A program made the translations under genes and the position numbers. The notes beneath the pieces were generated by a model. It saw nothing but the letters and a program-made list of their open reading frames with translations. It ran no database searches and was not told where the DNA came from. Below are positions 11,256-59,420 of a stretch of DNA of 64,000 bases, in pieces. The stretch spans positions 276,349,765-276,413,764 of the forward strand of contig NC_133620.1 of the NCBI RefSeq assembly GCF_048593235.1, in the 5' to 3' direction. The stretch comes from Sminthopsis crassicaudata. Taxonomy: Eukaryota. Position 1 is the first letter of the stretch; every line of letters starts with the position of its first letter.

Positions 11256-11830
11256 CTCGGCCTGGCCTGACTCGGCCCGGCCCCCGGGGTCTCGCTCCGG
11301 CTGCGCTCTGCTGCGATGGGCCCGCTCCGGCCTCTTGCCACCGCCGCTGCTGCCGCCGCCGCTGCCACCGCCGCCGCTGCCTGCGCTTTGAGCCCCGGCC
11401 GAGCCGTGCCCGCGCCTGCCATTGGCCCCAGCTCCCCCAAACCTGCCTAACAACCGTATTTCCCCTGCCGTGATTGGCCTTTGCAGCCAAAGGGGCTCTT
11501 TTTTTTCCTTATTGGAAGGGAAGAGTACAAACCGCCAGAGTTCGTTCCTAGGATTGGTTGAAGCGGGAGTCCCGCCCCCTAAGGGGGTGGATCTTGGAAT
11601 GGGAGGCGGGGGTAAGAAGGAAATCAAAGCTGGGCTCTGCGCGGGCTACTCTGAGTTGGGCTCCTGCGGCCAGGGAGCCCCGGTTTCCCAGCCTGGGTCG
11701 CTTACCTCCCTTCTACTCTCCGTTGTCCGCGGGGACCCCATTTCTCCTTTCCTGCACGTAGCGCAAAATCGGAAGACTTGGATGAGTCCCAGGCGTGACC
11801 CATTCTGTGTGCGGGCACATTGTGACTTTG
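10990..11830 (-). promoter_or_regulatory. PPP2R5D CpG island/promoter with four CCAAT boxes (11421, 11473, 11511, 11553) and a GC box (~11572)
   Basis: GC- and CpG-rich sequence; ATTGG motifs spaced 38-52 bp apart; CCCGCCCC motif. Confidence 0.8.
11229..11255 (-). CDS. PPP2R5D: PPP2R5D exon 1 coding part (27 nt)
   Basis: ATG at 11255 encodes MPYKLKKEK, followed by a GTGAG donor at 11228; lies in a CpG island. Confidence 0.96.
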
Positions 11831-11989
11831 GACAAGTCATTTCCCTCCCTCAGCCATGGTTGCTTCCACAAAATGGGAAAAATAAAACTTGTAAAGCCTG
11901 CATCAATCATCGATAATCTACCCCGATTTGCGACTTAAGTGTGACTCCCAATCCTCTCAGTGCCCCTCCCCCAAAGCCAGCCCTTGCCA

Positions 11990-35500: not shown

Positions 35501-38097
35501 AGGGTGTTGAGGATAAGTTCCCCCCACCCCAGTTTATTAAACATTTATGAGCACACCCCTGGGCTAAGGTTAGTATTCAAGGACACAAAGGTAGAGGGGA
35601 GGAGCAGGGCAGAGCCAGTGGGGAAGGAGGTGAGGGAGATCCAGTTTCACCATCACCCCCCTGGTTTCCCTGCTACTTAAGGGTTTGGTTTTTTTTTTTG
35701 GATGGGATGGGGGTCAGAGAGGTAGCTGCTTTGCCATGGAAAGAGGGGAATGATCACCATCCCCTTGGTTATTTCTTCTACCCCATGGCTGTCACACCTA
35801 CAGGAAGCAGATAACGTATGGCTACACTATCCCCTGCCTGACCCACTGGGATTTACTCTTCAGGTCTGACCATCCCTGGTCTAACAGGAGAAGAATAATG
35901 CTTCCTTATATGTGGATAGCACTTTATAGTTTGCAAAGCACATTCCACATCATTGTTTTCTCATTCAGTTCCGTCTAACAGCCTTATGAAATATGCAGAG
36001 CAACAATTAGCAGTGACATTTGGCAGATGAGGAAATTGAGGCTCAGGATTAGGAGATTTGTTTCACTGTTAGAGCAAAGTAAATGGCAGGTGGAGGATTA
36101 AAAGTAAATCATGCTGATGCCTGGACCCATGCCACCAGAGCAGGGACAAGCGATGTGAATGAGGTTAGGAACCCAAACTGTTCTCAGAGAAAATTAAAGG
36201 GGTTGGAGGAGAACTGAGAAGCAAGGGCAAGAGACAGCTCTCCACAGCTAGACTCAAGAAACTTGGCTTTGAAGTCAATCATGGAGAAAGACACTAAACT
36301 CTTAAAGATCCTTGACCATGAGAGCAAGAGCCCTTGAAGAGAAGCTACAGTGAGAAGAAAATAGAAATTGAACCAGAATAAAATTAAGGCATGAATTTAG
36401 GAGCAGAAAAAGGAGAGAACAGGAACAAGGAAAAAATACTTCCTTACAGACTCAGAATGTTAAGAGCTAGAAGGGTCAAGTCTAATCCACTGGAAAATTA
36501 TCAAGTGTCCATAGATAGGCTGACCTAATATGATAAAAATGACAATACTACCTAAATTAATCTACTTATTCAGTGCCATACCAATCAAACTCCCAAGAAA
36601 TTATTTTACAGACTAGAAAAAATAATAAAAGAGCTAGAAAGCCATCTAGTCATAGGATCTTAGAGCTAGAGCTGGCAGGGACCTCTGAGGCCATTGAAAA
36701 GGTCCCTCATTTTACAGGGGAAGAAAGTGAAGCACAAAGGTTAGGTAACCTTCGGGGGTCGCATAGCTATTAAGAGCCTGAGACAGGACTCCAAACCGGG
36801 TTTACCTCATTCAATTGGCTGCTCCACTATTCACTGTTCTACCTACTCCCACACCCTCATTTTACAAAGGAAAAAATTGGCCCCGAGCAGAATTGGCTTG
36901 CTATAAATCACAGCAAGTAATGGCAGAATCTGGACCAGAATTTGGGGCCCCTGACACAAGGTTCGGTGTGTTTCAGAGAATAGTATGTGAAGAATGCTGG
37001 TTCTCTGCATGGTCCCTCTGCTTCTAGACCAAGATCATCCCCTGGTCCCACATACCCCACTTGTCAAAAGCTTCCTCGTGACGACGGTTCCATCGTTCTT
37101 TCAGGGCGTACTTGAGCATCTTGTCACTGGCGTCCACACTGGTCACTTTGAAGCCCTCTTCCACTAGCATGATGGAGTCCACCCTGTGCCAGGTCCAGCA
37201 GGCAGTGATAGGACAGCGGAAGGGGAGAAGGAGGAGGAGGGAGGAGATGGACCAGAGAAGATAGGATGAGGACAAGAGGGGCCAGAAGGGAAAAGGGGAG
37301 AGGGAAAAGGGTAAGAGAGGAGTGATGGAGACAAGTAGGGTTAAGGAAGAGTAGGGCTAGAAAGGATGTTTTTGGAGTGGGGACTGAGGGTCAAAGGAAG
37401 ACCAGGAGGAACCCAGTACTTGTGAATGAGTTACTCTGGTGTTGAACTGACCCCCCCCCCATTATCACCCTCCACCCACCCACCCACCCACCCCCACCAC
37501 ATTTTTAATTCACTGAATCAAAAAATCCAGAAATCCACTTTCCCCCATACCCAAAGCATGACCTCCCTCTCTAGAAACTCCAGTGATATGCCAGACTAAA
37601 TTTCAGTGACAAGTGATTTCCTCCTTCACCATCATCAGAGAGAGGCAGCCCATTTTATTTTGGAAAGATCCTCTGACACCTTCCCCCCTATTTCCCACCC
37701 CGTCCTCACTTCCAGCCCCCTCCCCCCACCAATTTCACTCATGTATTCATGCTTGTCTCACTCCTCCACTTCCTCTGCTTTCCCTGCTGCAGGTAAAGCC
37801 CTAGGCAATTCCTGGCGACCACCTGGACTGGTGCCTGCTAGCTCCCCCCTACCCCCGGAGCATGTCATGCCCTGTGCTTCCCCAGCTTTACCCAGTGCCA
37901 CAAGCCACGTCAAGCACATGTTGGCAGCCGTGCTGGTGCAGCAGCCCCAGGAGCCAGGCCTTGTACTCATCCCTACGGCTTCGGGTGTCCCCTATGTACA
38001 GCTGCCAGACCCGTGCTGCCTCTCCATCGGCGTATTGGTCTGGGAGCCCCTCAGCTGCCACTCCCAGAGAGCGGGTCCGGTACACACTGTCTGCCAT
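32402..38097 (-). CDS. GNMT: Glycine N-methyltransferase, complete: 6 exons, 888 nt, 295 aa
   Basis: Starts [31 protein letters not shown], has SAM-binding motif VLDVACGTG and ends [12 protein letters not shown]. Exon sizes are 206/128/117/143/122/172, all GT-AG. Confidence 0.98.
32800..32921 (-). CDS. GNMT: GNMT exon 5 (122 nt)
   Basis: [40 protein letters not shown]. Confidence 0.96.
32990..34410 (+). mobile_element. LINE-2 fragments in GNMT intron 4, interrupted by a SINE (~33875-33990)
   Basis: L2 body and tail motifs; boundaries approximate. Confidence 0.6.
34560..34702 (-). CDS. GNMT: GNMT exon 4 (143 nt)
   Basis: [47 protein letters not shown]. Confidence 0.96.
35034..35150 (-). CDS. 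GNMT: GNMT exon 3 (117 nt)
   Basis: [38 protein letters not shown]. Confidence 0.96.
36473..36628 (+). mobile_element. Internal LINE-1 ORF2 fragment flanked by an 11-bp direct repeat
   Basis: Encodes [26 protein letters not shown]-like L1 ORF2 sequence; AAGAGCTAGAA at 36462-36472 and 36629-36639. Confidence 0.75.
37056..37183 (-). CDS. GNMT: GNMT exon 2 (128 nt)
   Basis: [42 protein letters not shown]. Confidence 0.96.
37892..38097 (-). CDS. GNMT: GNMT exon 1 coding part (206 nt)
   Basis: [10 protein letters not shown]...VLDVACGTG, donor GTAAAG. Confidence 0.97.
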
Positions 38098-38138
38098 CCT
38101 CTCGGTTCCCCTGGCCCCCCGGCCACCTGCCGACACAC

Positions 38139-38188
38139 TTATAAGGCTGCCCCGGCTTTTTTTGCCCAGCCTGCCTAACCTGTCCAAT
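38139..38188 (-). promoter_or_regulatory. GNMT proximal promoter: TATA-like TTATAA (38139-38144) and CCAAT (38184-38188)
   Basis: TTATAA lies 42 nt upstream of the ATG, consistent with a very short 5' UTR. Confidence 0.65.
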
Positions 38189-40609
38189 GGCAGGTGAGAT
38201 CCAGGACACGCCCCTGCCTGCTCTTCTCCCAGAGCCAGGAACCAGCAGTTCCTGACCTCCCAGGCTCTGTGAATGGCCTTCTTCTACCCCACCTCCCTAA
38301 CCCTTAGCTAGAGGAGCGTGTCATGTGGGAAACCTCCCCTCCATCCCCATCCCTGGCATCCAGGGGGAAGAGGAATCCTGAGCTTCTGAGAACCAAGGGT
38401 GGGAGGAGAAAGGGCAAACAAGTAACCCCAAAGGCTCAGGGAGACTGTCAGGGATAACCTTAATCCTTTCCTGAGTGTCCACTTGGGCACCAGGCCCGAG
38501 GAAGGCAGACAAGGGGTTAGGAGAGAGGGAACGGACTGATGAATAGTTAGATCACAACATCCTATCTCACAACTCTTCCACCCCCCCATATTTGGATGTA
38601 GTTATTATAAAAAGTAATTATACCAATCCCTTCTATGTCTAGCATAGATAGCTCCTAGCTTCTGCCTTCTCCAGGGTACTGGGGAGCTGGCCCAAGACAG
38701 CGGGGCCCATAGGGTGAGCTGGGTTTGAGGAGGGTTTGTCATGAAACCAGCATATTATCATCTTTGGAACACTGAACTTAGAGAACTGGCTTCAACTTTT
38801 TTTTATATCTGGTGAGAGTGGGATATAAAACTGGGTGTTACAGATAGGGGGGGATACTCAATGCTTAGTGGGCAAGGGGGGTACACCCATGTACCCAGGT
38901 CCTCCCAAGATCCCAGGATGTGGAAGGGAGGCAGGGCAGGGGTCAGAGCATGTTAAACACAAGGGAGAGGAGGAAGGGCTCCTGCCTGCTCAAACACCCA
39001 AAAGAACTCTAGTGATAGGCTAGCTATGGAGAGAGAGGCTCAGGGTCAGCCTGGAGCAGAAGTCTTAGCGACATACAATTGGACAACCTAGTTGCCACCC
39101 CAGAAAGAGGCCAAACCTCTGCCTAAGAAATCGATGAGATAAGTCCTGGGCGAAGAGGTGAACTCTCTCTGTTGGATAGTTCTGTTCAGTGAAACTTTTG
39201 AGAGGAAAAGTGTTGGATATTGGCAAGGAAACGGGTTGAGAAGCAAAGATGTGACCCCGCTTATACTGTGTGGGTATCTTCTCTCTACTCCACTCCCAAT
39301 TCTGATCCAAATGTCAGTCCTGGGCATTGAAGTCCAAAAGAGGGAAATTCCACTCCCATGGGGAAATTGAGCCAGTTGGGTCCCACCTAACATAGGATGT
39401 AAGGAGGGTAAGGACAGGCCCTTGACAGAAGTAATCTCTAAGAGTCAGTCTCTGCTTTTTCTTCAATCCATGGCAAGAGGGTTGTCAGCCAGAGAAGATA
39501 AAAAGTTTGCATTTCTCAAGGACAAGCCTGCCTTAACTCCTCCACAGAGGGGAGAGTGGGGAAGGACTGTGGGACTTAGAAGTTCACAAACCCACTCCTG
39601 GTCCATTAATTGGCCAGTAGGCCTGGACTTAGGCTGGGTGATAACAGGAGAAAACAGGGTCATTTTCAACACTAAACTTAAGGGAGTAGCCGTAGGGGGA
39701 GTCCAGCAGGATGTCTTCTTCCTTTTCAATAGGGAGGTGTGGGAGAAGAAATCAAACTGTACCCTGCATCATTAGTGCCACGTGTTGGAAGCTCTGGGCC
39801 CGGCTGCCCCAGGTTGCCTTTAGTATTAGCAGGGAGGGACAAAAAAGGCTAATTACCCTCCCCCTAACTTCAGAGGATATCATGAAATGAGCAAGTATTG
39901 GCTGGGGTAGGGGGAGGGGGAAGAGAGGAAGTCCTACGTGGTACATTCAAAAGGAAAAAACTGGGGACAAAGTTCAATGACAGGGGGCAGCCCTGAAAAG
40001 GGAAAATAGTAAATACATTACACAAAACCTGGAATCACAAAGGAGGGAGGAGGGATGGGACAGGACAGGGGTGAACAGCTTGCTGAAAGGTGCCCAATGG
40101 AGGTGACTAGGCAGAAAGGGGAAAAGGGAACAAAGGAAGACTCAAATTCTAGAACAAAAAAAGAAAGGACTCCAGGAAATCAAGTGGGAACAAGGATAGC
40201 TGTCATTTTGACTGTTACTCTAGAATAGGGTGTTTAAAAACCATCCTTGCAGTCTCTTTTCAAGGTCCAATATATGAGGGTACGGGCTGATGTGAAGGAC
40301 AACCTCCATCCTACTACCAGCCCTCTCCTCCCCTGTACTTCCTCCCAGCATTCTCCACCTTTCCTTCCCCTCCCCACTCCCTCCATGCATAATCTCCCCA
40401 TCAGGATTCTCTCTTTGCTACTGCTCTTCCAGATCAGCTTGCAAGAGTTCCCCAGAATAAATGGGAAATCAAGGACCAAAAAGGATTCATTGCCCTTTAC
40501 ACCATCCTTATGCCAATTCCCATGAATTCTGGATAGAAGAATGAGAGAAAAGCCAGGTAAAAGGCACAAAAAAGGGTTTTAGGACACCAAGTAAAAAGGC
40601 CAAATATTT

Positions 40610-40615
40610 TTTACT
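40610..40615 (-). terminator. Probable CNPY3 poly(A) signal, variant AGTAAA
   Basis: AGTAAA followed by U/GU-rich sequence about 540 nt after the stop; I saw no AATAAA on this strand between the stop and here. The human CNPY3 mRNA end is recalled as ...AGAGTAAAAA... (not verified). Confidence 0.55.
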
Positions 40616-41153
40616 CTGCACATTGTGCAGTAAAATGGGATTGGGAGGAGTAGAGGCTGGGTGTCACATGGCTGCAAGGGGGCTAGGGCCCTGGAGAAAA
40701 CGGCCAAAACCAGGACTGGGTGAGGAAGGCCTTCCTGGTAGGACTGGGGCCAGGAGAGAGATGTTTCTGAAACCGGGGGAGTGGTGTTGCTGAACCACTC
40801 CCAATGGAAGAAGGTGGGGGTGCACCCATGGGACAATGAGGGATAGAGTCCTCCCTGAGGGCTCGGCAATGCTCAGACTCATCCCTCAAAGGTTTACAAT
40901 GCAGTTTTTAGCTCTGGGGCCGCCACACAGCTCTTCTTCCAAGCCCAGGGGAGAAGCAGCTGCCAGGAAAGGAAAAGGAAGGGCAGGCTCTGTAATCCTC
41001 AGTGGGACAAGGGCACAGCAGGGGGGGTGCAGTGAACCCCCAGAGCTGGGGAGTCCATCCTTGTCTGCCAGAGGCACAAGAGAACACAGTCTCCCTCAGC
41101 CAAGGGCTTCCTTCTGCACCCCTGGGACAGTAGATGGGGTGCTCAGTTGGATT

Positions 41154-41371
41154 CTACAGTTCATCGGTGGGGCTGTGTGTGAGAGGGGTGGCTTTCTGGA
41201 CACCCTCATCCTCCTCAGGATGAGGATCCTCATCTAGATTTCTTGGGTCTTTCCTCTGCTTGCTGTTCTTCTTATTGGACACCTTGCTTTTGCCTCCCTT
41301 TTTCTTGGCTTTCTTCCCTCCCAAGGCTGCTGTATCTCCCTTCTTGCTGATCCATTGCTCAGTCAGGCAAC
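41154..41371 (-). CDS. CNPY3: CNPY3 exon 6 coding part (218 nt), stop TAG
   Basis: [20 protein letters not shown]...[10 protein letters not shown]. Confidence 0.96.
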
Positions 41372-44300
41372 CTGTTGAAGGGAGAGGGGAAGGAATACAA
41401 TGCTCAACCAGCAACAACTAGAAATATTCATCTGCTAAGCACCTACTGGGCATCAACCACTGGCCTGAGACTATTGTAATAAGGTTTGGGAGAGGATGCT
41501 AAGGAAAGGGAGAGGAAATAGGGATACAAGGAAAAGCCCGATATTCATTAAGTAAGCAGGCATTTGTAGTCACAAGAGAAGGTTCCAATCCTGGCCTATT
41601 CATTAGCTGTGCGACTCTGGTCAATTTCTTTAATGTCTCTAAACCTGATTCTTTATATATGAAACAGGGAAAATAACACTTGTGATAAAGCTGATCAAGC
41701 ATAATTCAAGAGTGTTATTTCAAAGCATGATCTTCATGGTACTACTGACTCGTGCCTGGGAGGTGATGGATTAATATGTGGAACACAACACATACGGGGT
41801 AAAAGGATGGGAGGAAAACCAGTGAGAGACACAAAAAAGAGGGGTTAGGACACTGAGTAAAAAAACAAATTTTTTTACTCTGAACATTATGCAATAAAAT
41901 GGGTTGGGGCAGGATAGTGTGTGAGTGTCACATGCTCCTGAGGGGGGTTAGAGCCCTGGGGAGACAGCTGTGACCAGGTCTGGGGGGGAGCTCTGATGGT
42001 TTCACCAGGGACCTCTGCCTCTGACGCCTATGACCTAATGGCCTAGATATACATGCTTTGCCTGGCCCACACTAAACTCATCTGGTATCCATTTTGTAAA
42101 TATTCTGAATCTTTTTGAAAGCTGTGTGGAGCTGCAGCCTCCCCAAATAACCCAGGCTCTCCAAGGACAAAATCTCTGTCCTCTGAGATCCCCATCCCAC
42201 CCCCATTTTCCCAGTGTTTCCAGGCATTCCAGCAGGGGTATGTGACCTGAGCCCCCACTGCCCTGCCCCCAACCTCAGACTCACTTGTGTCTTTCCCCTT
42301 TAGCACATGATTAGCGCAGAGAAAGGAGGTTAGGTCCTCTTCCTGATGGTTCCGATACCAGTCCTCAATCACTTCTTCGAATTCCTCCACCAGCACATCA
42401 CACTAAAGCAGAACCCAACAGAGGCACAGATACACAGAATGTAGAATGTCACAGCTGCAAGAGTCTTCAGAAATCAGCTAGTCCAGTTTCTTCATTTTAT
42501 AAAGAATTTTATATCATATTTATAAAGGCTTATCTGAGAGCCCCAGGAAGGGATACTGACAAACCATTATCATTGCCAACTCCACTTGGATTCTCTGGTG
42601 GCAGCTTGTGCTTCTGATCAACATGGACCCCCTTTCCTGAGCTGTCCTTGCTGAAAAAAGACTAAAATGGTACAAGTGGCGAGAAGGGGCCTTGGAATTT
42701 GGGAACTCATATCCTATCTTTCCCCCATGACACAGACCTAATTCATCTCCCAGGCACTATCTGTGCTGTGCTATCTTGCTGATTCCACAAACACTAATTT
42801 AGTTCTTTGTACAGTGCACTGTGCTAGATTTTTGGGGAGATAAGTTGAAGGGAGTAGAGGAATCATGCACAACTAAGTAGGTAGTGAAATGGGAAAAGGA
42901 GAAATCCAAACAAAATCCTCTATGAAAATGTAAAGAGGAGAATGGAATGACACTAAGAACAGGTGGGGGAATTCCATAGGCACATACCTGCTTCTTGAGG
43001 TCAGCTACCTCAGCCGAAGTCTCATTCCATAGTTCATAGGGAATGTCCATCACTACCTTCACCCCCTTGTGAACTAGATTGTGGAGTGTTTCAAAAGTCT
43101 CAGACATGCCCTAAGAAGAAGAAACATAAGAGTATCTGCCCACCTGCCCTTCTCAACGCCTGAAGGTACTAGTGATAGACATTTTTATATTGAGCTGCAG
43201 GGACCGCAAAATCACAGCATCTCAGAGTTAGTGGGATCTCCACAACCATCTAATCCAGCCCACACCTGAATAGGAAACCTTCAGTCACACTGCCAATCGG
43301 GCCTTTCACATCTTACTTTGGCTTCTTCTCCCTCTTGCTATTATTGCTGGTCTTGATTTTGGCCTTCTTTCTAGGCTGCTACTCAACAGTCATGACTTCT
43401 TACTTTTATCTTTGCTCTCTAGCCTCAACCCAAGTTCCTCACTCACTTTTCCTACTTTCCAACCTTTTGCTGATATTTACTCAGGACTTCACTTGAGACC
43501 TAGTTCTCCAATTCTGAAGAGCACTAAAAGTCTGGAAGCTGGCATTAGAGCTCCCACCACAAATGGGTAGCTCTAACCACTTCTGCCACTGGGACTTCAG
43601 CAATCTTTCAGGCCTTTCAGAATACTTCTACTGTCAGTTGATAAGAAGAATACAAACCTTATATTTGAATGGTGGGGTTGAAGGAGTTAAACAGAGTACC
43701 AATATAAAATGATAAAGTGCAATAGGAGCCAGCCTCGGGAAATAAGACCTTCGAAGGTTTGCACTTCAAATTACACCCATAGGAACCACATAAGNNNNNN
43801 NNNNNNNNNNNNNNNNNNNNNNNNNNNNNNNNNNNNNNNNNNNNNNNNNNNNNNNNNNNNNNNNNNNNNNNNNNNNNNNNNNNNNNNNNNNNNNNNNNNN
43901 NNNNNNNNNNNNNNNNNNNNNNNNNNNNNNGGGATGATACCAACCTTAGCAAACCGGTTGCTGCCACTCCTTTCCTTATGCAAGCTATAGTCCAGAAGTC
44001 TCTTGCAGATGGTCTCAGTTACTTCAATTAACCGAAGATCCCTGAAGAAATGCCAACATAAAGGATACTGATCTCCCCACCCATTTCCAGTTGGTTCCTG
44101 CTGTTGCTACCACAGGAATGTGGACAAGTTTTTCCTGCCTGTGGGGGGCAGGAGGGGGGATCATAGAATCATACATAGGATGCCATAGCCAGAAAGTGCC
44201 TTAGAGAGACCATTTAGTCAAACACTATTCTTTTATAAATAAGGAAACTGAGGCCCACAGAAAAGAAATCACTTGCTCAAGATTTAACAATGATTAGTAA

Positions 44301-47300
44301 CAGAACCAGGACTAAAACTCAACTGTCTGGATTTCTAAATCAATGTTCTTTCCATTCCATCACATGGCCTTGTGAGTCACTGTTTTCTCCTGGGAGATGA
44401 GAAGGGGGCAGACAGTCCCCATCATCTCCACGAATGGACTAAGGCAGACTAATGTACCCACTGCTCACTTACGATTTGGTATATTTGACTCTGGAGGCTT
44501 TCTGGTCTAGGATGCCATAGCCTGTATCAATCACTTCCTTGGTCTTGCCAGTCTCCTCAAAAGCTGACTTCAGTTCCACGGCTACATACTTGCACACTAG
44601 GAGAAAGAGGCAAAACACAGATAGGTGAATGGATGACACTTCAGGGCACTCTCCAGCTAAGGCAAACCTGAGACTCTTCCTACCTATCAATCCTGGAAAC
44701 AAGTGGGGTTCTCTGACCAATCAATAGGAGCTGGTTCTAGATGCTCAGATGAAATACATCACATCCACATCTTGCCACCCATATTCCAAGTTCCCTTCAG
44801 TGCCTATTTCTTGTCATTTTCTTGCTCCAGTCAAATTTATTGCTAGTCTCCCACATGATTTGTCTGTTCCAGACCTCTTTTGATGAAAATACCACCCCCC
44901 CCACCAGCCTAGAACACCTTTCTTCCCCATGCTACTCAATCCACATTCAGTATCTTCAGTACCTCTAGGAAACCCTTTCTTTGAGTGAAATGAACCTAGT
45001 TGATTCTTATCTTGCTGTTATGTCAATTATCAAAGTGATTTTCCTAAAGCATAGATCTGACCAAATTGCTCCCCTTTTCAATAAACTCCTGTTTTAAAGC
45101 TCTTTACCATCTATGCCCTTTCCTGCCTTTATCATACATTATTTCACGCATTCTATAACAGTCATACCAGCTTCTTTCTGTTTCTCATATAAGACATTTT
45201 CTTTCTCATTTTTATGCCCTGACACTTTGCTGTGCATGTTCCTGAGCCAGAAGCATTACCATCCTCACCCCCTTCTCTTGGGACCCCTGACTTTTTCTTC
45301 TGCAGGAAACTCCTGCCTTCTTGCTGCTCCTTTCCCATTAGGTTACCTAGTATACATGAACATGTTGCTTTTTCCATTTGAATGGAATTTGGAGGTTTTG
45401 CCATTTTTTTCCCTCCTCTTTTTTCTGCATCTCCAATGCTTAACAAGTCCCTGCCATATGGTGGGAATTTAATAAATGCTAGTTGATTTTCTGATTACAG
45501 GGTCCCTTCAACACTTAAGTACTCAAAATAAATTTCTTCATTTGGCCTTCCTTGTGTGGTATTTTTAAAATATCTTGGGCTACATTCTCATGTCTCTTCC
45601 TCCCCTCCAGAGTATAAGCACCTCAAGATTAAGGTCTTTATTTTCTATTTCTTTCTATCTTTTTTACTGTGACCATTATACAATAGATATTCAATAAGCA
45701 ATAAATATTGTTGAAAGGAGGACAAAATGACTTAATATCTGCTTAAGGGCTAAGCAGGTCCTCGTGCCCCTTTTAATACAATATGGCCTTGAGCCTAAGC
45801 TTCATTACAATTAAAATATTGATGGCAATTTACCAGTGACAAGTAACATGTCCTGGAAAATCATATGATGGTATTTTCTAACATATGAATTAACTAATTG
45901 CCTTGAGACTCTATCCAGGGACATAAAGAAATGACTCTTGAATAATTTCATCAAATAAGCTAGTTCTTTGAGAGTATGAATTTAAATTACAGCTCACCTC
46001 CCTAGTTCTCCATTTCATGCCATCTGCTGTCTTTTTTCCTACATTCCTCAATTCAATCCCTTCACTCCAGGAAAGCACATCATCTTTCTGGCTTCTCTGC
46101 CCCCTTCTCCCACGCCCTCTGTGTGAATTGCAAGGCCTGGGGGTTTGGAATACCCTCCTATTCTACCACCCATCCAACCATAAGCCATCTCCTCAACTCC
46201 TCCAAACTTCACTACCTAACAAGCCCCTCTGGGGATCCCACCCAGAACCAGAACTGGGGAAGCTGTAGCATGGAACCCAGAAACTCCTGGCCATCCACCC
46301 ACCCATCCCCTTTCCTGGGCATCTGTACAACGTTCACATGTGCTGAGGCCTGTCTCTCTCTCAGGCTAATGGGCCAGAAGCCCAGCTCTGTGGGCCAGGC
46401 ACAATAAACACTTATATAAGAATATAAAATTATTATTAATAATAGCATAGTAAAGAAAAGCCTGAGGGCTGGAATTTGCCAAATCAGTGTGGAGCTCTAA
46501 CCATCTTTGTTGAATCACCTATAAAATGAGGAGGGTAACAACCAATGCCATCTATCAAAAACAAGCATACACTCCCATTTTAGTATTCTAGGCCCTCCAT
46601 TAGGTTCCAACCTCCCTTTCCAACCTTATACTACCCTTCTCTCGTTGTATTGTCTATATTCCAGCCAAACTGGGTTATCTTCCTCCTTAATTCCCATCAT
46701 GCTGCTGCTTACCTCCCTGCCTCTGCTTACACCAGTGGTATCAAACTTCAATAGAAATGAATTACCCAAAGTTTTACTATATTCTTATTTTGTTATAACA
46801 CCTTTAGTTTGTCTTTTCTGACATACTATGCCCCATGCCTGAGAGGACTCTTCCTCTTCCCTATTTCCACTTAGGTCATCCGAACCTCAATTTTATTTAA
46901 AATCACTTTTTCCTCCTCAAGTGTCTTTGCTTAAACTCTGTATACTTCTCTTACTTGCTCTGTATCATCCTTATCCGTAAACTTATTGTCCCAATTCAAT
47001 TTTAAACTTTTTAAAAAGAGTATCTGTGTCATATCTATCTTTGTATCCACTGAACAATAAACATTAGGTGAACTTTAAATTTATCTTATATTTGTAAAGC
47101 TAAAACTTTATAAAATACTTTCACATGCACTGTCTTATCTGACTCTTACACTAATCTGATGAGTAAGCAGGGTTAATCTTTTCTCCATTTTATAGATGAA
47201 GAAATTGAGGCTCAGAGAAGTGAACTGATTAGCTTCTCGGGACATTATCACACAATCCTAAGTCTTCTCGATCCTGATCTAGTTTTCTTATAAAATCACT

Positions 47301-49160
47301 TTTAGCTCTAAAATTCTCCCCGTTAGGAGAAAACTCTGACCTCATTCTAAGAACATGAACTAAAGTGAGAGTACAGAGAAAAAAAATGAAACTGTCCTTG
47401 AGGCCCCTTAGTTTTAAGATAACGAAAAAGAGTGGGAAGAAAAATGAAACCACAAAGAGCCCTCTGCCAAGGGAGGCAGGCCAGATGGAGAGATCCTCGA
47501 CCTGGAGAGCAAGTGGGAAGAAAGAGGGGAGAACAAAAGCTGGTGAAATGAGATATTCTGAGCTAGGATGGAGAGGAAACAAGTGAAAGCCTGGCCTACA
47601 AGATTATAAGATTTTTGAGGGCTGGGATACTCTCTCATTAATAGTATTTCCCTGGACTCTAGCAAGGGAGTCCTCATACTTAAGAAATGTCTAAACAGTG
47701 AAAAAGCAGTTCTCATTTCAATTCATCAAATTTCATTAAATGCTTACTATGCACAAGGAGTCCTCAGTACTGGAAAACAAAGATGAAAATATTCCCTCAA
47801 AGTGTTTACAATCTAACATGTACATAGATAACTGTGCTCAAAGACAAAATATGCTATAAAATAAGTCAAATTAGAACAGAAAGGGATGATCCAGATGATT
47901 CCTTCATTTTATTTGTGAGGAAAACGAGGCCAAGGGTCCCTGGGCCAGTAATTAGTAGTATAAGGACCATATCTCCAGAAATCCAGGATGACTTCCTGAA
48001 AGAAGTGTTCACCAAAATGATGCAAAAGTAAACAGTCAAAAACCTTTTAGAAATTCAAACTTTCTCACTCTTCTTTCATGATTATTATTAATTTCATCAT
48101 TATTAGTAATAATGATGAGCTGACACTTACATAGCAATTACTATGTGCCAAGAGCTTTACTAACTACTGTCTCATGTGGTCCTTACACGTGATTCTCATA
48201 TGAAACCTTAAAAGGGAGGTGCTATTATTATCTCTATTTTATAGTTGAAGAAATTAGCAGACAATTAGGTAACTTGCCTAAGATCACAGAGCTAGTAAGT
48301 ATCTGAGGTATGACCTGAACTCAGGTCTTTTTGACCAGTGCTCTACCCACTGCCATCCCTTTTTTTCCCTACCTTCTCTGGAACGTTTTTTTTAAAAACA
48401 ACTACATACTCTTTTAAACTCTGCCCTTCACTACACCTTTCTTTCCCATCCTCACATACACTGCTAACATTTGTACGCTGCTTTAAGGCTTTAGCTTTAT
48501 AGATATATAGATAACATAGATTTGATTCTCACAACTCTACGAGGTAGGTTCTATTATTATCCCATTTTCCTAAAAAGGAAACTGAGGCAAAGGTTTAAAT
48601 GAGTTGCCCGGAATCACACAACTCCTGAATGTCGGGGGTGCGATATGAACTCGGGCCTTCCTGACTCTAGGTCTAAGACACTACTTACTCCCCCTTCTCA
48701 ATTTATTTTATCCCTACCATTCAATGCAACTATCACTAATGAAGACCCTCTTAAGTGCAGGCATAGACCTCATTTTTCCACACGAGCCCCCTCTCCTATC
48801 TTTCTCAGTCCTCTCTTTGCTTCCTAGTGGAGCCCCTAGCCCTAAGCCCAAGCCCCGCCCCTCCTCCAAGCCCCGCCCCCCAACAAGAGGACCCGCCCTT
48901 TCCCTTCAGGCCCCGCCCCCGCTTCTACATCAAGTTCCGCTTCGTCCTCCTCGCACTCCTTCCCCCCCATCCATCCCGACCCCACCCCCCTCACCCTCGC
49001 ACTTGCTGGGCAGTCGGACCCAATCGGTCTCCTCAGCCGAGGCACTCAACTCCGAGGGGGAGAGCAGGAGCAGGAGCAGCAGCAGCAGCAGCAGGAGGAG
49101 AAGGCGGTGGGGTCGGGACCGGGGCGCAGGCGGCAGCGGCGGCGGCAGCGGCCGCTCCAT
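41154..49160 (-). CDS. CNPY3: Canopy FGF signaling regulator 3 (PRAT4A, ER co-chaperone for TLRs), complete: 6 exons, 846 nt, 281 aa
   Basis: Signal peptide with poly-Leu, [27 protein letters not shown], saposin-like cysteines, and a basic C-terminus ending HSPTDEL*. Exon sizes are 166/124/97/123/118/218. Confidence 0.97.
42285..42402 (-). CDS. CNPY3: CNPY3 exon 5 (118 nt)
   Basis: [39 protein letters not shown]; donor GTGAGT. Confidence 0.96.
42988..43110 (-). CDS. CNPY3: CNPY3 exon 4 (123 nt)
   Basis: [41 protein letters not shown]. Confidence 0.96.
43795..43930. other. Assembly gap (136 N) in CNPY3 intron 3
   Basis: N run. Confidence 1.
43945..44041 (-). CDS. CNPY3: CNPY3 exon 3 (97 nt)
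   Basis: [32 protein letters not shown]; donor GTTGGT. Confidence 0.95.
44473..44596 (-). CDS. CNPY3: CNPY3 exon 2 (124 nt)
   Basis: [40 protein letters not shown]; donor GTAAGT. Confidence 0.96.
44990..45490 (+). mobile_element. LINE-2 3' fragment
   Basis: GATTTTCCTAAAGCATAGATCTGACC...TTTAATAAATGCTAGTTGATT. Confidence 0.65.
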
Positions 49161-52650: not shown

Positions 52651-52799
52651 TTTTTTTTTTTTTTAATTCCCCAGGCATTTGGATTAAGTGACTTGCCCAG
52701 GGTCACACAGCTAGGAAGTGTTAAATGTTAGGGCAGATTTGAACTCAGGTCCTCCTGACTTCAGGGCTGGTGCTCTATATTCGACACTGAGGTGCCCTC
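52651..52799 (-). mobile_element. WSINE1-like SINE with poly(A) tail and ~12-bp TSD
   Basis: TCCTCCAA(C/T)TTT at 52639-52650 and 52800-52811; SINE head/core in reverse. Confidence 0.8.
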
Positions 52800-53014: not shown

Positions 53015-53815
53015 GTTGCTATTCTCAATTTTTTTGGTCTCAGGACTCCTTTACATTCTTTTAATATTTTATTTTCCCCCCAATTACATGTGAATGTTTT
53101 TAACATTCATTTAAAAAAATTTTTTTAAATTCCAAATTCTTTCCCTTTCCTCTCTCTTCATTGAAAGGCAAGTAAGCAATTTTATATAGGTTATCTATTT
53201 GCAATAATACAAAACATATGTCTATAGCCCCTTTACAATTTTAAAAAGATTATTCTCTCCCCAACTTCTCTCCCTGCTTCCTACCCCACCACCCCAAGTA
53301 TTCAGCCAGTTACATGATAGAGTGCCTGGCTTGAAATTAGGAAAACTCATCTTCCTGAATTCAAATCTGGCCTCAGACATTAAGATGCATGACCCTGGGC
53401 AAGTCACTTTATCTTGTTTACCTCAGTTTCCTCATCTACAAAATGAATAGGAGAAGGAAAAGGCAGTATCTTTGCTAAGAAAACCCCAAAGGGTAGCTAG
53501 GTGGCAAAGTGGATTGAACACTGACCCTGGGACAGGTGGACTTGAGTTCAAATCCAACTTCAGATACACTTACAAGCTGTATGACCTTGAACAAGTTACT
53601 TAATCCCAACTGCCTTGCAAAGAAAAAGAAAATCCCAAATGAGGTCATGAAAAGTCAGATCTGACTGAAAAGAGTGGATAACAACTAAGAGTTATTGTGC
53701 CATATTTATTGAAATTTACCACATTATTAGAAATTAAAACATCTTACTATTGTTAGAAAAGGACCCCTGAAGGGGTTTCAGGGACCCCAGGTGATCTAAT
53801 GTGGAGAACTTCTGA
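53015..53815. mobile_element. Ancient hAT/Charlie-like non-autonomous DNA transposon relic, split by an L1 fragment (~53060-53225) and SINEs (~53320-53690)
   Basis: Degenerate terminal motifs TTCTCAA...GGTCTCAGGAC and TGGAGAACTTCTG; CCTTTACA repeated either side of the L1 piece. Family name not certain. Confidence 0.45.
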
Positions 53816-59290: not shown

Positions 59291-59420
59291 NNNNNNNNNN
59301 NNNNNNNNNNNNNNNNNNNNNNNNNNNNNNNNNNNNNNNNNNNNNNNNNNNNNNNNNNNNNNNNNNNNNNNNNNNNNNNNNNNNNNNNNNNNNNNNNNNN
59401 NNNNNNNNNNNNNNNNNNNN
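59291..59420. other. Assembly gap (130 N) inside L1-derived sequence
   Basis: N run. Confidence 1.

What the first reader, a model, noticed from the sequence alone, without database searches (positions are those of the whole stretch)
40564..41990. CNPY3 terminal 3'-UTR/poly(A) region duplicated inside CNPY3 intron 5
Seen: the ~165 bp at the presumed end of the CNPY3 3' UTR (40564-40730) recur in the same orientation inside intron 5 (41829-41990), at about 80% identity by eye over the core. Both copies keep the AGTAAA hexamer (40610-40615 and 41874-41879, - strand) and the downstream U/GU-rich tract. I saw no third copy and did not recognise it as a SINE or LINE. Inference: a local duplication gave the gene a second, intronic 3'-end-processing site upstream of the last exon, or the intronic copy is a relic of a duplicated terminal exon.
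Basis: partly seen in the sequence, partly recalled or inferred. Interest (0 to 1): 0.7.

Follow-up and report, generated by a model that had tools for sequence, protein, structure and literature searches.

The report
Unused intronic duplicate of CNPY3 poly(A) site
About 195 bases around the authentic, mammal-wide conserved end-of-message signal of the CNPY3 gene were copied long ago into the gene's last intron, and the RNA data available give no sign that the copy is used, so it is most likely an ordinary small duplication relic.

Summary
Copy A (40526-40720) and copy B (41792-41984) are direct repeats. They are 79.9% identical over aligned bases (75.9% counting gaps), with blastn E 6e-27. 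There is no third copy in the 64-kb window and no wider duplicated block.

Copy A is the true CNPY3 poly(A) region. AGTAAA (40615-40610, minus strand) is the only AATAAA, ATTAAA or AGTAAA hexamer between the stop codon and position 40500. mRNA contigs of three RNA runs end 27-71 nt before it. Six eutherian species carry the same CAGAGTAAA..TTTTGGCCTTTT motif 389-618 nt after their CNPY3 stop.

Copy B is therefore a derived duplicate that eutherians lack. The similarity runs about 70 nt past the cleavage site and there is no A-tail, so it arose at the DNA level and is not a retrocopy. No exon sequence was duplicated.

I found no evidence that copy B is used:
- Only the exon 5-exon 6 junction is seen.
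- Low-depth intron contigs read through the site.
- Copy B has lost the conserved GGCC.
- One individual is heterozygous for a ~20-nt deletion of its downstream element.

Logan contigs cannot map RNA ends, so rare or tissue-specific use stays open. Genome-wide copy number was only weakly tested. Verdict: real, ordinary, low interest.

The parts
40526..40720 (-). Copy A: the last ~105-125 nt of the CNPY3 3' UTR, the poly(A) signal, and about 70 nt of downstream flank. This is the ancestral copy.
   Evidence: Matches copy B. Its core aligns to the CNPY3 3' end of six eutherian species at the syntenic distance from the stop codon.
40610..40615 (-). AGTAAA poly(A) signal of CNPY3. It lies 539 nt after the stop codon and is followed by TTTGGCCTTTTT and a T/GT-rich tract.
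   Evidence: It is the only AATAAA, ATTAAA or AGTAAA between the stop codon and 40500 on the minus strand. mRNA contigs end at 40642, 40663 and 40686, and none continues past it. The hexamer is conserved in eutherians.
41792..41984 (-). Copy B: the derived duplicate of copy A, inside intron 5.
   Evidence: 79.9% identical to copy A. It is absent from the ~250-290-bp eutherian intron 5. It is present in a related species, organism B, on a contig spanning 41749-42165.
41874..41879 (-). AGTAAA hexamer retained in copy B, 405 nt downstream of the intron 5 donor site. It is a potential cryptic intronic poly(A) signal.
   Evidence: Sequence. No RNA evidence of use. The conserved GGCC downstream is lost. 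The predicted RNA pairs the hexamer with the downstream U-run, at -9.4 kcal/mol and z -2.5.
41833..41858 (.). Polymorphic ~20-nt deletion within copy B's putative cleavage and downstream-element region.
   Evidence: DNA run X5 holds two contigs over 41803-41924. One is 122 nt with no change, at depth 31.7. The other is 102 nt with 20 bases left out, at depth 29.3.
41154..41371 (-). CNPY3 exon 6 coding part, ending ...SPTDEL and the stop codon. The 3' UTR continues down to about 40595.
   Evidence: ORF. Junction 41369/42283 in X12, X18 and X19. 58-69% identical to eutherian exon-6 peptides.
41372..42284 (-). CNPY3 intron 5, 913 nt, GT..AG. It holds a MIR-like element (~41400-41700) and copy B.
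   Evidence: Joint 'skips 913, CT..AC (cut +2)' in three RNA runs. The MIR-like piece has seven weak relatives in the window.
42285..42404 (-). CNPY3 exon 5. Read-through into the intron would add 79 residues and stop at 42045-42043, upstream of copy B.
   Evidence: ORF. RNA contig pieces cover 42283-42404.

Best explanation
A single, old, local DNA-level duplication in the lineage of this (apparently marsupial) genome copied about 195 bp spanning the authentic CNPY3 poly(A) site. The copied piece ran from ~105-125 nt of terminal 3' UTR through AGTAAA to ~70 nt past the cleavage site. It landed 1,266 bp upstream, in intron 5, in the same orientation. Copy A is the ancestral, functional site, conserved across therian mammals. 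Copy B keeps the hexamer and a U-rich tail but is a neutrally decaying relic. At most it is a weak cryptic intronic poly(A) signal that is normally skipped. The likely reasons for skipping are inferred, not shown: the 913-nt intron is spliced efficiently, the site lies only ~405 nt from the 5' splice site (within the range where U1 snRNP is known to suppress poly(A) sites), and the copy has lost the conserved GGCC element. Shown: the duplication, its polarity (A to B), its DNA-level origin, and the absence of any sign of use in the contigs. Inferred: neutrality, the suppression mechanism, and an age of tens of millions of years from K2P ~0.24-0.27.
For: The repeat is significant and unique in the window. 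As a control, a MIR-like element in the same intron matches other copies in the window at only 4-12 bits, whereas A matches B at 65.7 bits. Copy A is the orthologous site: in all six eutherian species examined, the only AATAAA, ATTAAA or AGTAAA within 1.2 kb after the CNPY3 stop (or up to the contig end where that comes sooner) is an AGTAAA at +389 to +618. The A+B profile's best hit in each locus falls on that hexamer, on the correct strand (E 0.005-0.17). Alignment A3 shows the shared CAGAGTAAA..TTTTGGCCTTTT motif; copy A keeps GGCC and copy B does not. The eutherian intron 5 is ~250-290 bp and holds no copy. Similarity continues ~70 nt beyond the expected cleavage site and there is no A-run, so the origin is DNA, not mRNA. 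RNA contigs from X12, X18 and X19 show one joint only (41369/42283) at depth 154-991. Intron contigs at depth 3-6 span the putative site (X12 41733-41909; X19 41749-42165). Intron 5 upstream of copy B is no deeper than intron 4 or the downstream part of intron 5. No A-tailed loose end is listed among those shown (36 more were not shown). A heterozygous ~20-nt deletion removes copy B's downstream element in one individual. Core identity (85%) is not clearly above flank identity (78%).
Against: All the runs served were Logan contigs, which cannot show RNA ends, strand or level, so weak or tissue-specific use of copy B cannot be excluded. Copy B still has an intact AGTAAA and a U-rich downstream tract after about 24% divergence. 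Genome-wide copy number was tested only through DNA contigs at 80% likeness or more, and that test barely registered the known MIR core. About one extra contig's worth of depth lies over ~40550-40650 and is not listed in the output, so a third partial copy elsewhere is possible. No other marsupial genome could be examined.
Confidence: 0.72

Rival explanations
1. Copy B is a functional, regulated intronic poly(A) site. When it is used, exon 5 runs on into the intron (a composite terminal exon). The message would encode CNPY3 without its lysine-rich tail and C-terminal ...TDEL, carrying 79 intron-coded residues instead.
For: An intact AGTAAA with a U/GU-rich downstream tract, copied from a real poly(A) site. 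The read-through frame stops at 42045-42043, upstream of the site, so the product would be defined. Human CNPY3 has a validated intronic polyadenylation isoform, though in intron 3 (PMC12126230; PMC12586162).
Against: No contig ends there. Contigs read through it, there is no depth step across it, and no A-tailed loose end is listed. The conserved GGCC is lost. A deletion allele removes the downstream element. The core is no better conserved than expected if only copy A is constrained.
Confidence: 0.1
2. Both copies are members of an old, low-copy interspersed repeat family that happen to lie 1.3 kb apart. One of them was co-opted as the poly(A) site.
For: The test for old repeats was insensitive: the MIR core at 41546-41642 drew only a few DNA contigs. 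Some unexplained extra DNA depth lies over ~40550-40650. There is a loose by-eye resemblance to the MIR '...GTAAAATGGG' region.
Against: No other copy in 64 kb by blastn or nhmmer, while a genuine MIR-like element finds seven. Copy A's core is orthologous to the eutherian CNPY3 3' end, so it predates the therian split. Yet A and B are 78% identical even in their flanks, which is far too similar for independent insertions of that age. No excess DNA contigs lie over copy B. Nothing in Rfam.
Confidence: 0.07
3. Relic of a tandem duplication of the whole terminal exon plus UTR, of which only the 3' end survived.
For: Same orientation, with the copy upstream of the real last exon. The spacing of 1,266 bp is of the order of the last exon's length.
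Against: No similarity between 41985-43700 and the exon 6 coding sequence or the proximal UTR, although coeval sequence at ~76-80% identity would be found easily. The place where a duplicated exon 6 would lie is occupied by exon 5 and its flanks. The eutherian intron is short and simple.
Confidence: 0.07
4. Copy B is a 5'-truncated retrocopy of the CNPY3 mRNA 3' end, inserted into the gene's own intron.
For: It includes the terminal UTR and the signal, in sense orientation.
Against: Similarity continues ~70 nt beyond the expected cleavage site. There is no poly(A) tract at the end and no target-site duplication visible.
Confidence: 0.03

Closest known systems
Cryptic or latent intronic poly(A) signals suppressed by splicing and U1 snRNP ('telescripting'; named from my own knowledge, not tested here)
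   Same: A hexamer plus a U-rich downstream tract, in the sense strand of a short intron, ~405 nt from the 5' splice site, with no detectable use.
   Different: Most such sites arise by chance or from transposable elements. This one is a copy of the gene's own authentic poly(A) region.
Human CNPY3 variant 2 (NM_001318848.2), a TDP-43-repressed intronic polyadenylation isoform (PMC12126230; PMC12586162)
   Same: Same gene. [quoted passage not shown]
   Different: The human event is in intron 3 and was validated experimentally. The copy here is in intron 5, is absent from the eutherian contigs examined, and shows no evidence of use. No human sequence was examined here.
Small intragenic dispersed or segmental duplications
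   Same: About 195 bp, same orientation, 1.3 kb apart, roughly uniform divergence of ~20-24%, and no mobile-element hallmarks.
   Different: The duplicated piece happens to be a conserved RNA-processing signal.
MIR / CORE-SINE fossils
   Same: Comparable age, and one lies next to copy B in the same intron.
   Different: A and B do not match the MIR-like copies in the window. They match each other about 50 bits better than MIR copies match one another.

Membership tests
Functional mammalian poly(A) site - copy A | Hexamer (AAUAAA or a common variant) 10-30 nt upstream of cleavage, with a U/GU-rich downstream element | tested here: met
   AGTAAA at 40615-40610, then TTTGGCCTTTTTACTTGGTGTCC...TTTTTTGTGCC.
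Functional mammalian poly(A) site - copy A | Transcript 3' ends map just downstream of the hexamer | tested here: inconclusive
   High-depth mRNA contigs stop at 40642, 40663 and 40686. In X12 and X18 nothing lies beyond; X19 has only a depth-6 contig over 39800-40404. Contigs cannot show exact ends or tails.
Functional mammalian poly(A) site - copy A | Conservation at the orthologous position | tested here: met
   Six eutherian species have AGTAAA plus TTTTGGCCTTT at +389 to +618 from the stop, and it is the only top-3 hexamer there.
Functional intronic poly(A) site - copy B | Hexamer plus downstream element | tested here: met
   AGTAAA at 41879-41874, then TTTGTTTTTTTACTCAGTGTCC. The conserved GGCC is lost.
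Functional intronic poly(A) site - copy B | Transcripts that run from exon 5 into the intron and end at the site, giving a depth step and A-tails | tested here: not met
   Contigs span the site (41733-41909; 41749-42165). Depth upstream is no higher than downstream or in intron 4, and no A-tailed loose end is listed. This is a weak test because only contigs were available.
Functional intronic poly(A) site - copy B | Purifying selection on the copy across species | not testable with these tools
   No other marsupial locus could be fetched. The word search returned only eutherian exon-6 ORFs. One deletion allele segregates.
Interspersed repeat family (SINE, LINE or DNA transposon) | Many dispersed copies | tested here: inconclusive
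   None in the 64-kb window and no pile-up of DNA contigs at 80% likeness or more over copy B. That test is insensitive to old families, and about one unlisted contig's worth of depth lies over copy A.
Interspersed repeat family (SINE, LINE or DNA transposon) | Structural hallmarks: tRNA-like head, A-tail, terminal inverted repeats, target-site duplication | tested here: not met
   None seen at the boundaries. Rfam gave no match.
Processed retrocopy of the mRNA 3' end | Ends at the cleavage site with a poly(A) tract | tested here: not met
   Homology runs ~70 nt past the site and there is no A-run.
Tandem terminal-exon duplication | Collinear similarity that includes exon sequence | tested here: not met
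   Only one 194-column block between 38200-41796 and 41797-46000.

The most novel reading that the evidence does not exclude
The gene's own conserved poly(A) module was duplicated into its last intron and now serves as a conditional, for example tissue- or stress-specific, intronic polyadenylation switch. The product would be a CNPY3 lacking its lysine-rich tail and ...TDEL end. That would be a lineage-specific, independently evolved counterpart of the TDP-43-controlled intron-3 event in human CNPY3.
Probability: 0.07. Interest if true: 0.45.

Novelty: new member of a known kind. Interest (0 to 1): 0.2.

Why it matters
If copy B were used, it would be a clean natural example of a new alternative 3' end made by copying a gene's own processing signal. 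It would also truncate an ER co-chaperone needed for Toll-like-receptor folding. As the evidence stands it is a small neutral duplication. Its main value is for annotation: it pins down the true CNPY3 poly(A) site as AGTAAA, conserved between this genome and eutherians. It also warns that the intronic look-alike should not be annotated as a transcript end without 3'-end data.

Tried and rejected
1. A wider duplication: blastn of 38200-41796 against 41797-46000 found only the one block.
2. A known RNA family: Rfam at E <= 1 over 38000-46000 found nothing.
3. A MIR origin, which I suspected by eye from '...GTAAAATGGG': neither copy matches the MIR-like copies in the window.
4. A conserved hairpin at the signal: the predicted folds are weak (z -1.7 and -2.5), differ between the copies, and are absent in a eutherian (z -0.4).
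5. Orthologous marsupial loci: the word search with the exon-6 peptide returned only eutherian exon-6 ORFs.
   - I ran no further search on this.
6. Direct alignment of the eutherian 3' UTR by blastn found nothing beyond the exons. Only the A+B profile found the short conserved core.
7. Earlier scan findings: only this same finding came up by place, and nothing by sequence.
8. The N runs (43795-43930, 59291-59420) were left untouched.
9. No contig that I took for human was used. The eutherian contigs carry exon-6 peptides that differ from the human one as I recall it, which rests on memory and was not checked.
Full report
**Observation**

The window's plus strand at 40526-40720 (copy A) recurs in the same orientation at 41792-41984 (copy B).
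- blastn gives 76.3% identity over 194 columns, E 6e-27.
- nhmmer gives 65.7 bits, E 1.7e-19.
- A gapped global alignment gives 151/189 identical aligned bases (79.9%, or 75.9% with gap columns) and K2P 0.24.
- The local alignment score is 85, against 10.0 +/- 1.5 for 500 shuffles.
- Neither blastn (word size 7) nor nhmmer with an A+B profile finds a third copy in the 64 kb.
- Comparing 38200-41796 with 41797-46000 finds no other collinear block, so only about 195 bp were duplicated.

**Gene context**

CNPY3 lies on the minus strand.
- Exon 6 starts at 41371 and its stop codon is at 41154-41156 (...SPTDEL).
- Exon 5 is 42285-42404.
- The intron between them is 41372-42284, 913 nt, GT..AG.
- The exon 5-exon 6 junction is present in contigs of three RNA runs from three studies, at depths of 154, 991 and 251.
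- The exon order read from the ORFs matches a six-exon CNPY3, so 'intron 5' is correct.
- GNMT exon 1 follows at about 38187-37888 on the same strand.

**Copy A is the real, ancestral poly(A) region**

On the minus strand, the only AATAAA, ATTAAA or AGTAAA between the stop codon and 40500 is AGTAAA at 40615-40610, 539 nt after the stop.

The high-depth mRNA contigs stop at 40663 (X12), 40686 (X18) and 40642 (X19). The X19 contig ends in a library adapter, not an A-tail. In X12 and X18 nothing lies further downstream. This fits cleavage near 40590-40600 but does not prove it, because contigs cannot show ends.

A word search with the exon-6 peptide (window:41157-41369:-) returned 19 exon-6 ORFs, 58-69% identical. 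The eight whose sequences I read look eutherian. I fetched genomic contigs for six different ones (L001/L002, L007, L008, L009, L010, L011).

In every one, the only AATAAA, ATTAAA or AGTAAA within 1.2 kb after the stop (or up to the contig end, which comes first in L009 and L011) is an AGTAAA at +389 to +618. The best hit of the A+B profile in each locus lands on it, on the correct strand and on the same profile positions (E 0.005-0.17 in 32.6 kb).

Alignment A3 shows a shared CAGAGTAAA..TTTTGGCCTTTT motif. Outside this core the eutherian 3' UTRs cannot be aligned to the window.

So the core of copy A predates the split between this lineage and eutherians. Copy B, which is 78% identical to A even in the unconstrained flanks, must be a much later derivative of A. 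The eutherian intron 5 is only ~250-290 bp and holds no copy.

**Mechanism of origin**

The similarity continues about 70 nt beyond the expected cleavage site, and copy B has no A-tract at that point. The template was therefore DNA, not mRNA.

No exon or proximal-UTR similarity accompanies copy B, so a decayed tandem duplication of the last exon is unlikely. The boundaries show no target-site duplication or terminal repeats.

As a control for ordinary old repeats, the MIR-like element at 41400-41700 in the same intron finds seven other copies in the window at only 4-12 bits. A and B are not like that.

A related species also has copy B. This is organism B in run X19, about 3% diverged in exons and about 7% mismatched plus indels in the intron, with a contig over 41749-42165. 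With K2P ~0.24-0.27, the duplication is several times older than that species split. Tens of millions of years is my inference.

**Is copy B used?**

I found nothing that says so.
- Only one splice joint is reported in the stretch.
- Intron contigs at depths of 3-6 span the putative site: X12 41733-41909 and X19 41749-42165.
- In X12, depth upstream of the site (3.2) is not above depth downstream (5.1) or in intron 4 (6.6).
- No A-tailed loose end appears among those listed (36 more were not shown).
- Copy B has lost the GGCC that copy A and all six eutherians keep.
- In DNA run X5, from a different individual, the region 41803-41924 is a two-allele bubble. One allele lacks 20 nt within 41833-41858, at depths 29.3 and 31.7. 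That removes the GU-rich stretch just downstream of copy B's hexamer.
- Core identity (85%) against flank identity (78%) is about what constraint on copy A alone would give.
- Predicted hairpins are weak and not conserved.

From established knowledge, a poly(A) signal 405 nt from a 5' splice site in a 913-nt intron is expected to be outcompeted by splicing and suppressed by U1 snRNP. That step is inferred.

If the site were used, exon 5 would read on for 79 codons to a stop at 42045-42043. The protein would lose the lysine-rich tail and ...TDEL.

**Limits**

- Every run served was a set of Logan contigs. RNA ends, strand and level cannot be read from them, so rare or tissue-specific use remains possible.
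- The genome-wide copy number test, DNA contigs at 80% likeness or more, showed no pile-up on copy B. It barely registered the MIR core, so it is insensitive to old families.
- Roughly one contig's worth of unexplained extra depth lies over ~40550-40650. The contig concerned is not among those listed.
- No other marsupial genome could be reached.
- I did not verify that the genome is a dasyurid; organism names were coded.

**Comparison with known cases**

Human CNPY3 has a validated, TDP-43-repressed intronic polyadenylation isoform, variant 2. It is in intron 3 (PMC12126230; also PMC12586162), so it is not homologous to this copy.

The nearest description of what is here is a latent intronic poly(A) signal created by a small dispersed duplication.

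**Verdict**

The feature is real and ordinary, a new member of a known kind, with interest about 0.2.

Noticed in passing
window 41400-41700: A MIR / CORE-SINE-like element in intron 5, next to copy B. It has seven weak relatives in the window: 48552-48640, 11786-11894, 52683-52747, 14622-14659, 48223-48311, 53362-53443 and 21484-21545.
   Followed up: partly
window 42453-42505 (intron 4): A short stretch where many DNA contigs of run X5 lie only partly, at under 90% likeness. Bin depth is 567 against about 58 around it, with many loose ends, so it looks like a fragment of a high-copy repeat.
   Followed up: no
window 41833-41858: A heterozygous ~20-nt deletion allele in one individual (run X5), inside copy B.
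   Followed up: partly
window 43795-43930: An N run begins about 14 nt after the end of CNPY3 exon 3 (...RFAK), so it covers the start of intron 3. The known human CNPY3 intronic polyadenylation event is in intron 3 (PMC12126230).
   Followed up: no
window 37888-38187 (-) and 39800-40404: GNMT exon 1 lies about 2.4 kb downstream of the CNPY3 poly(A) site on the same strand. Run X19 has a low-depth (6.2) contig in the intergenic stretch. It could be read-through transcription or DNA carried over into the RNA library.
   Followed up: no
window 40550-40650: DNA run X5 shows about one contig's worth of extra depth here. Neither the overlap of the two local contigs nor copy B explains it, since no contig fitted two places. 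It could be a third partial copy elsewhere or a low-complexity match; the contig was not listed.
   Followed up: no
window 40600-40640 and 41855-41880: In both copies the AGTAAA hexamer sits inside A/U-rich inverted repeats. In copy A it pairs with the upstream UUUUAC around a CUGCAC/GUGCAG stem. In copy B it pairs with the downstream U-run. The folds are weak and absent in eutherians.
   Followed up: yes
L002:1133-1380; L007:3260-3554: The eutherian CNPY3 intron 5 is only ~250-290 bp, against 913 bp here. The extra length in this genome is the MIR-like element plus copy B and their flanks.
   Followed up: partly
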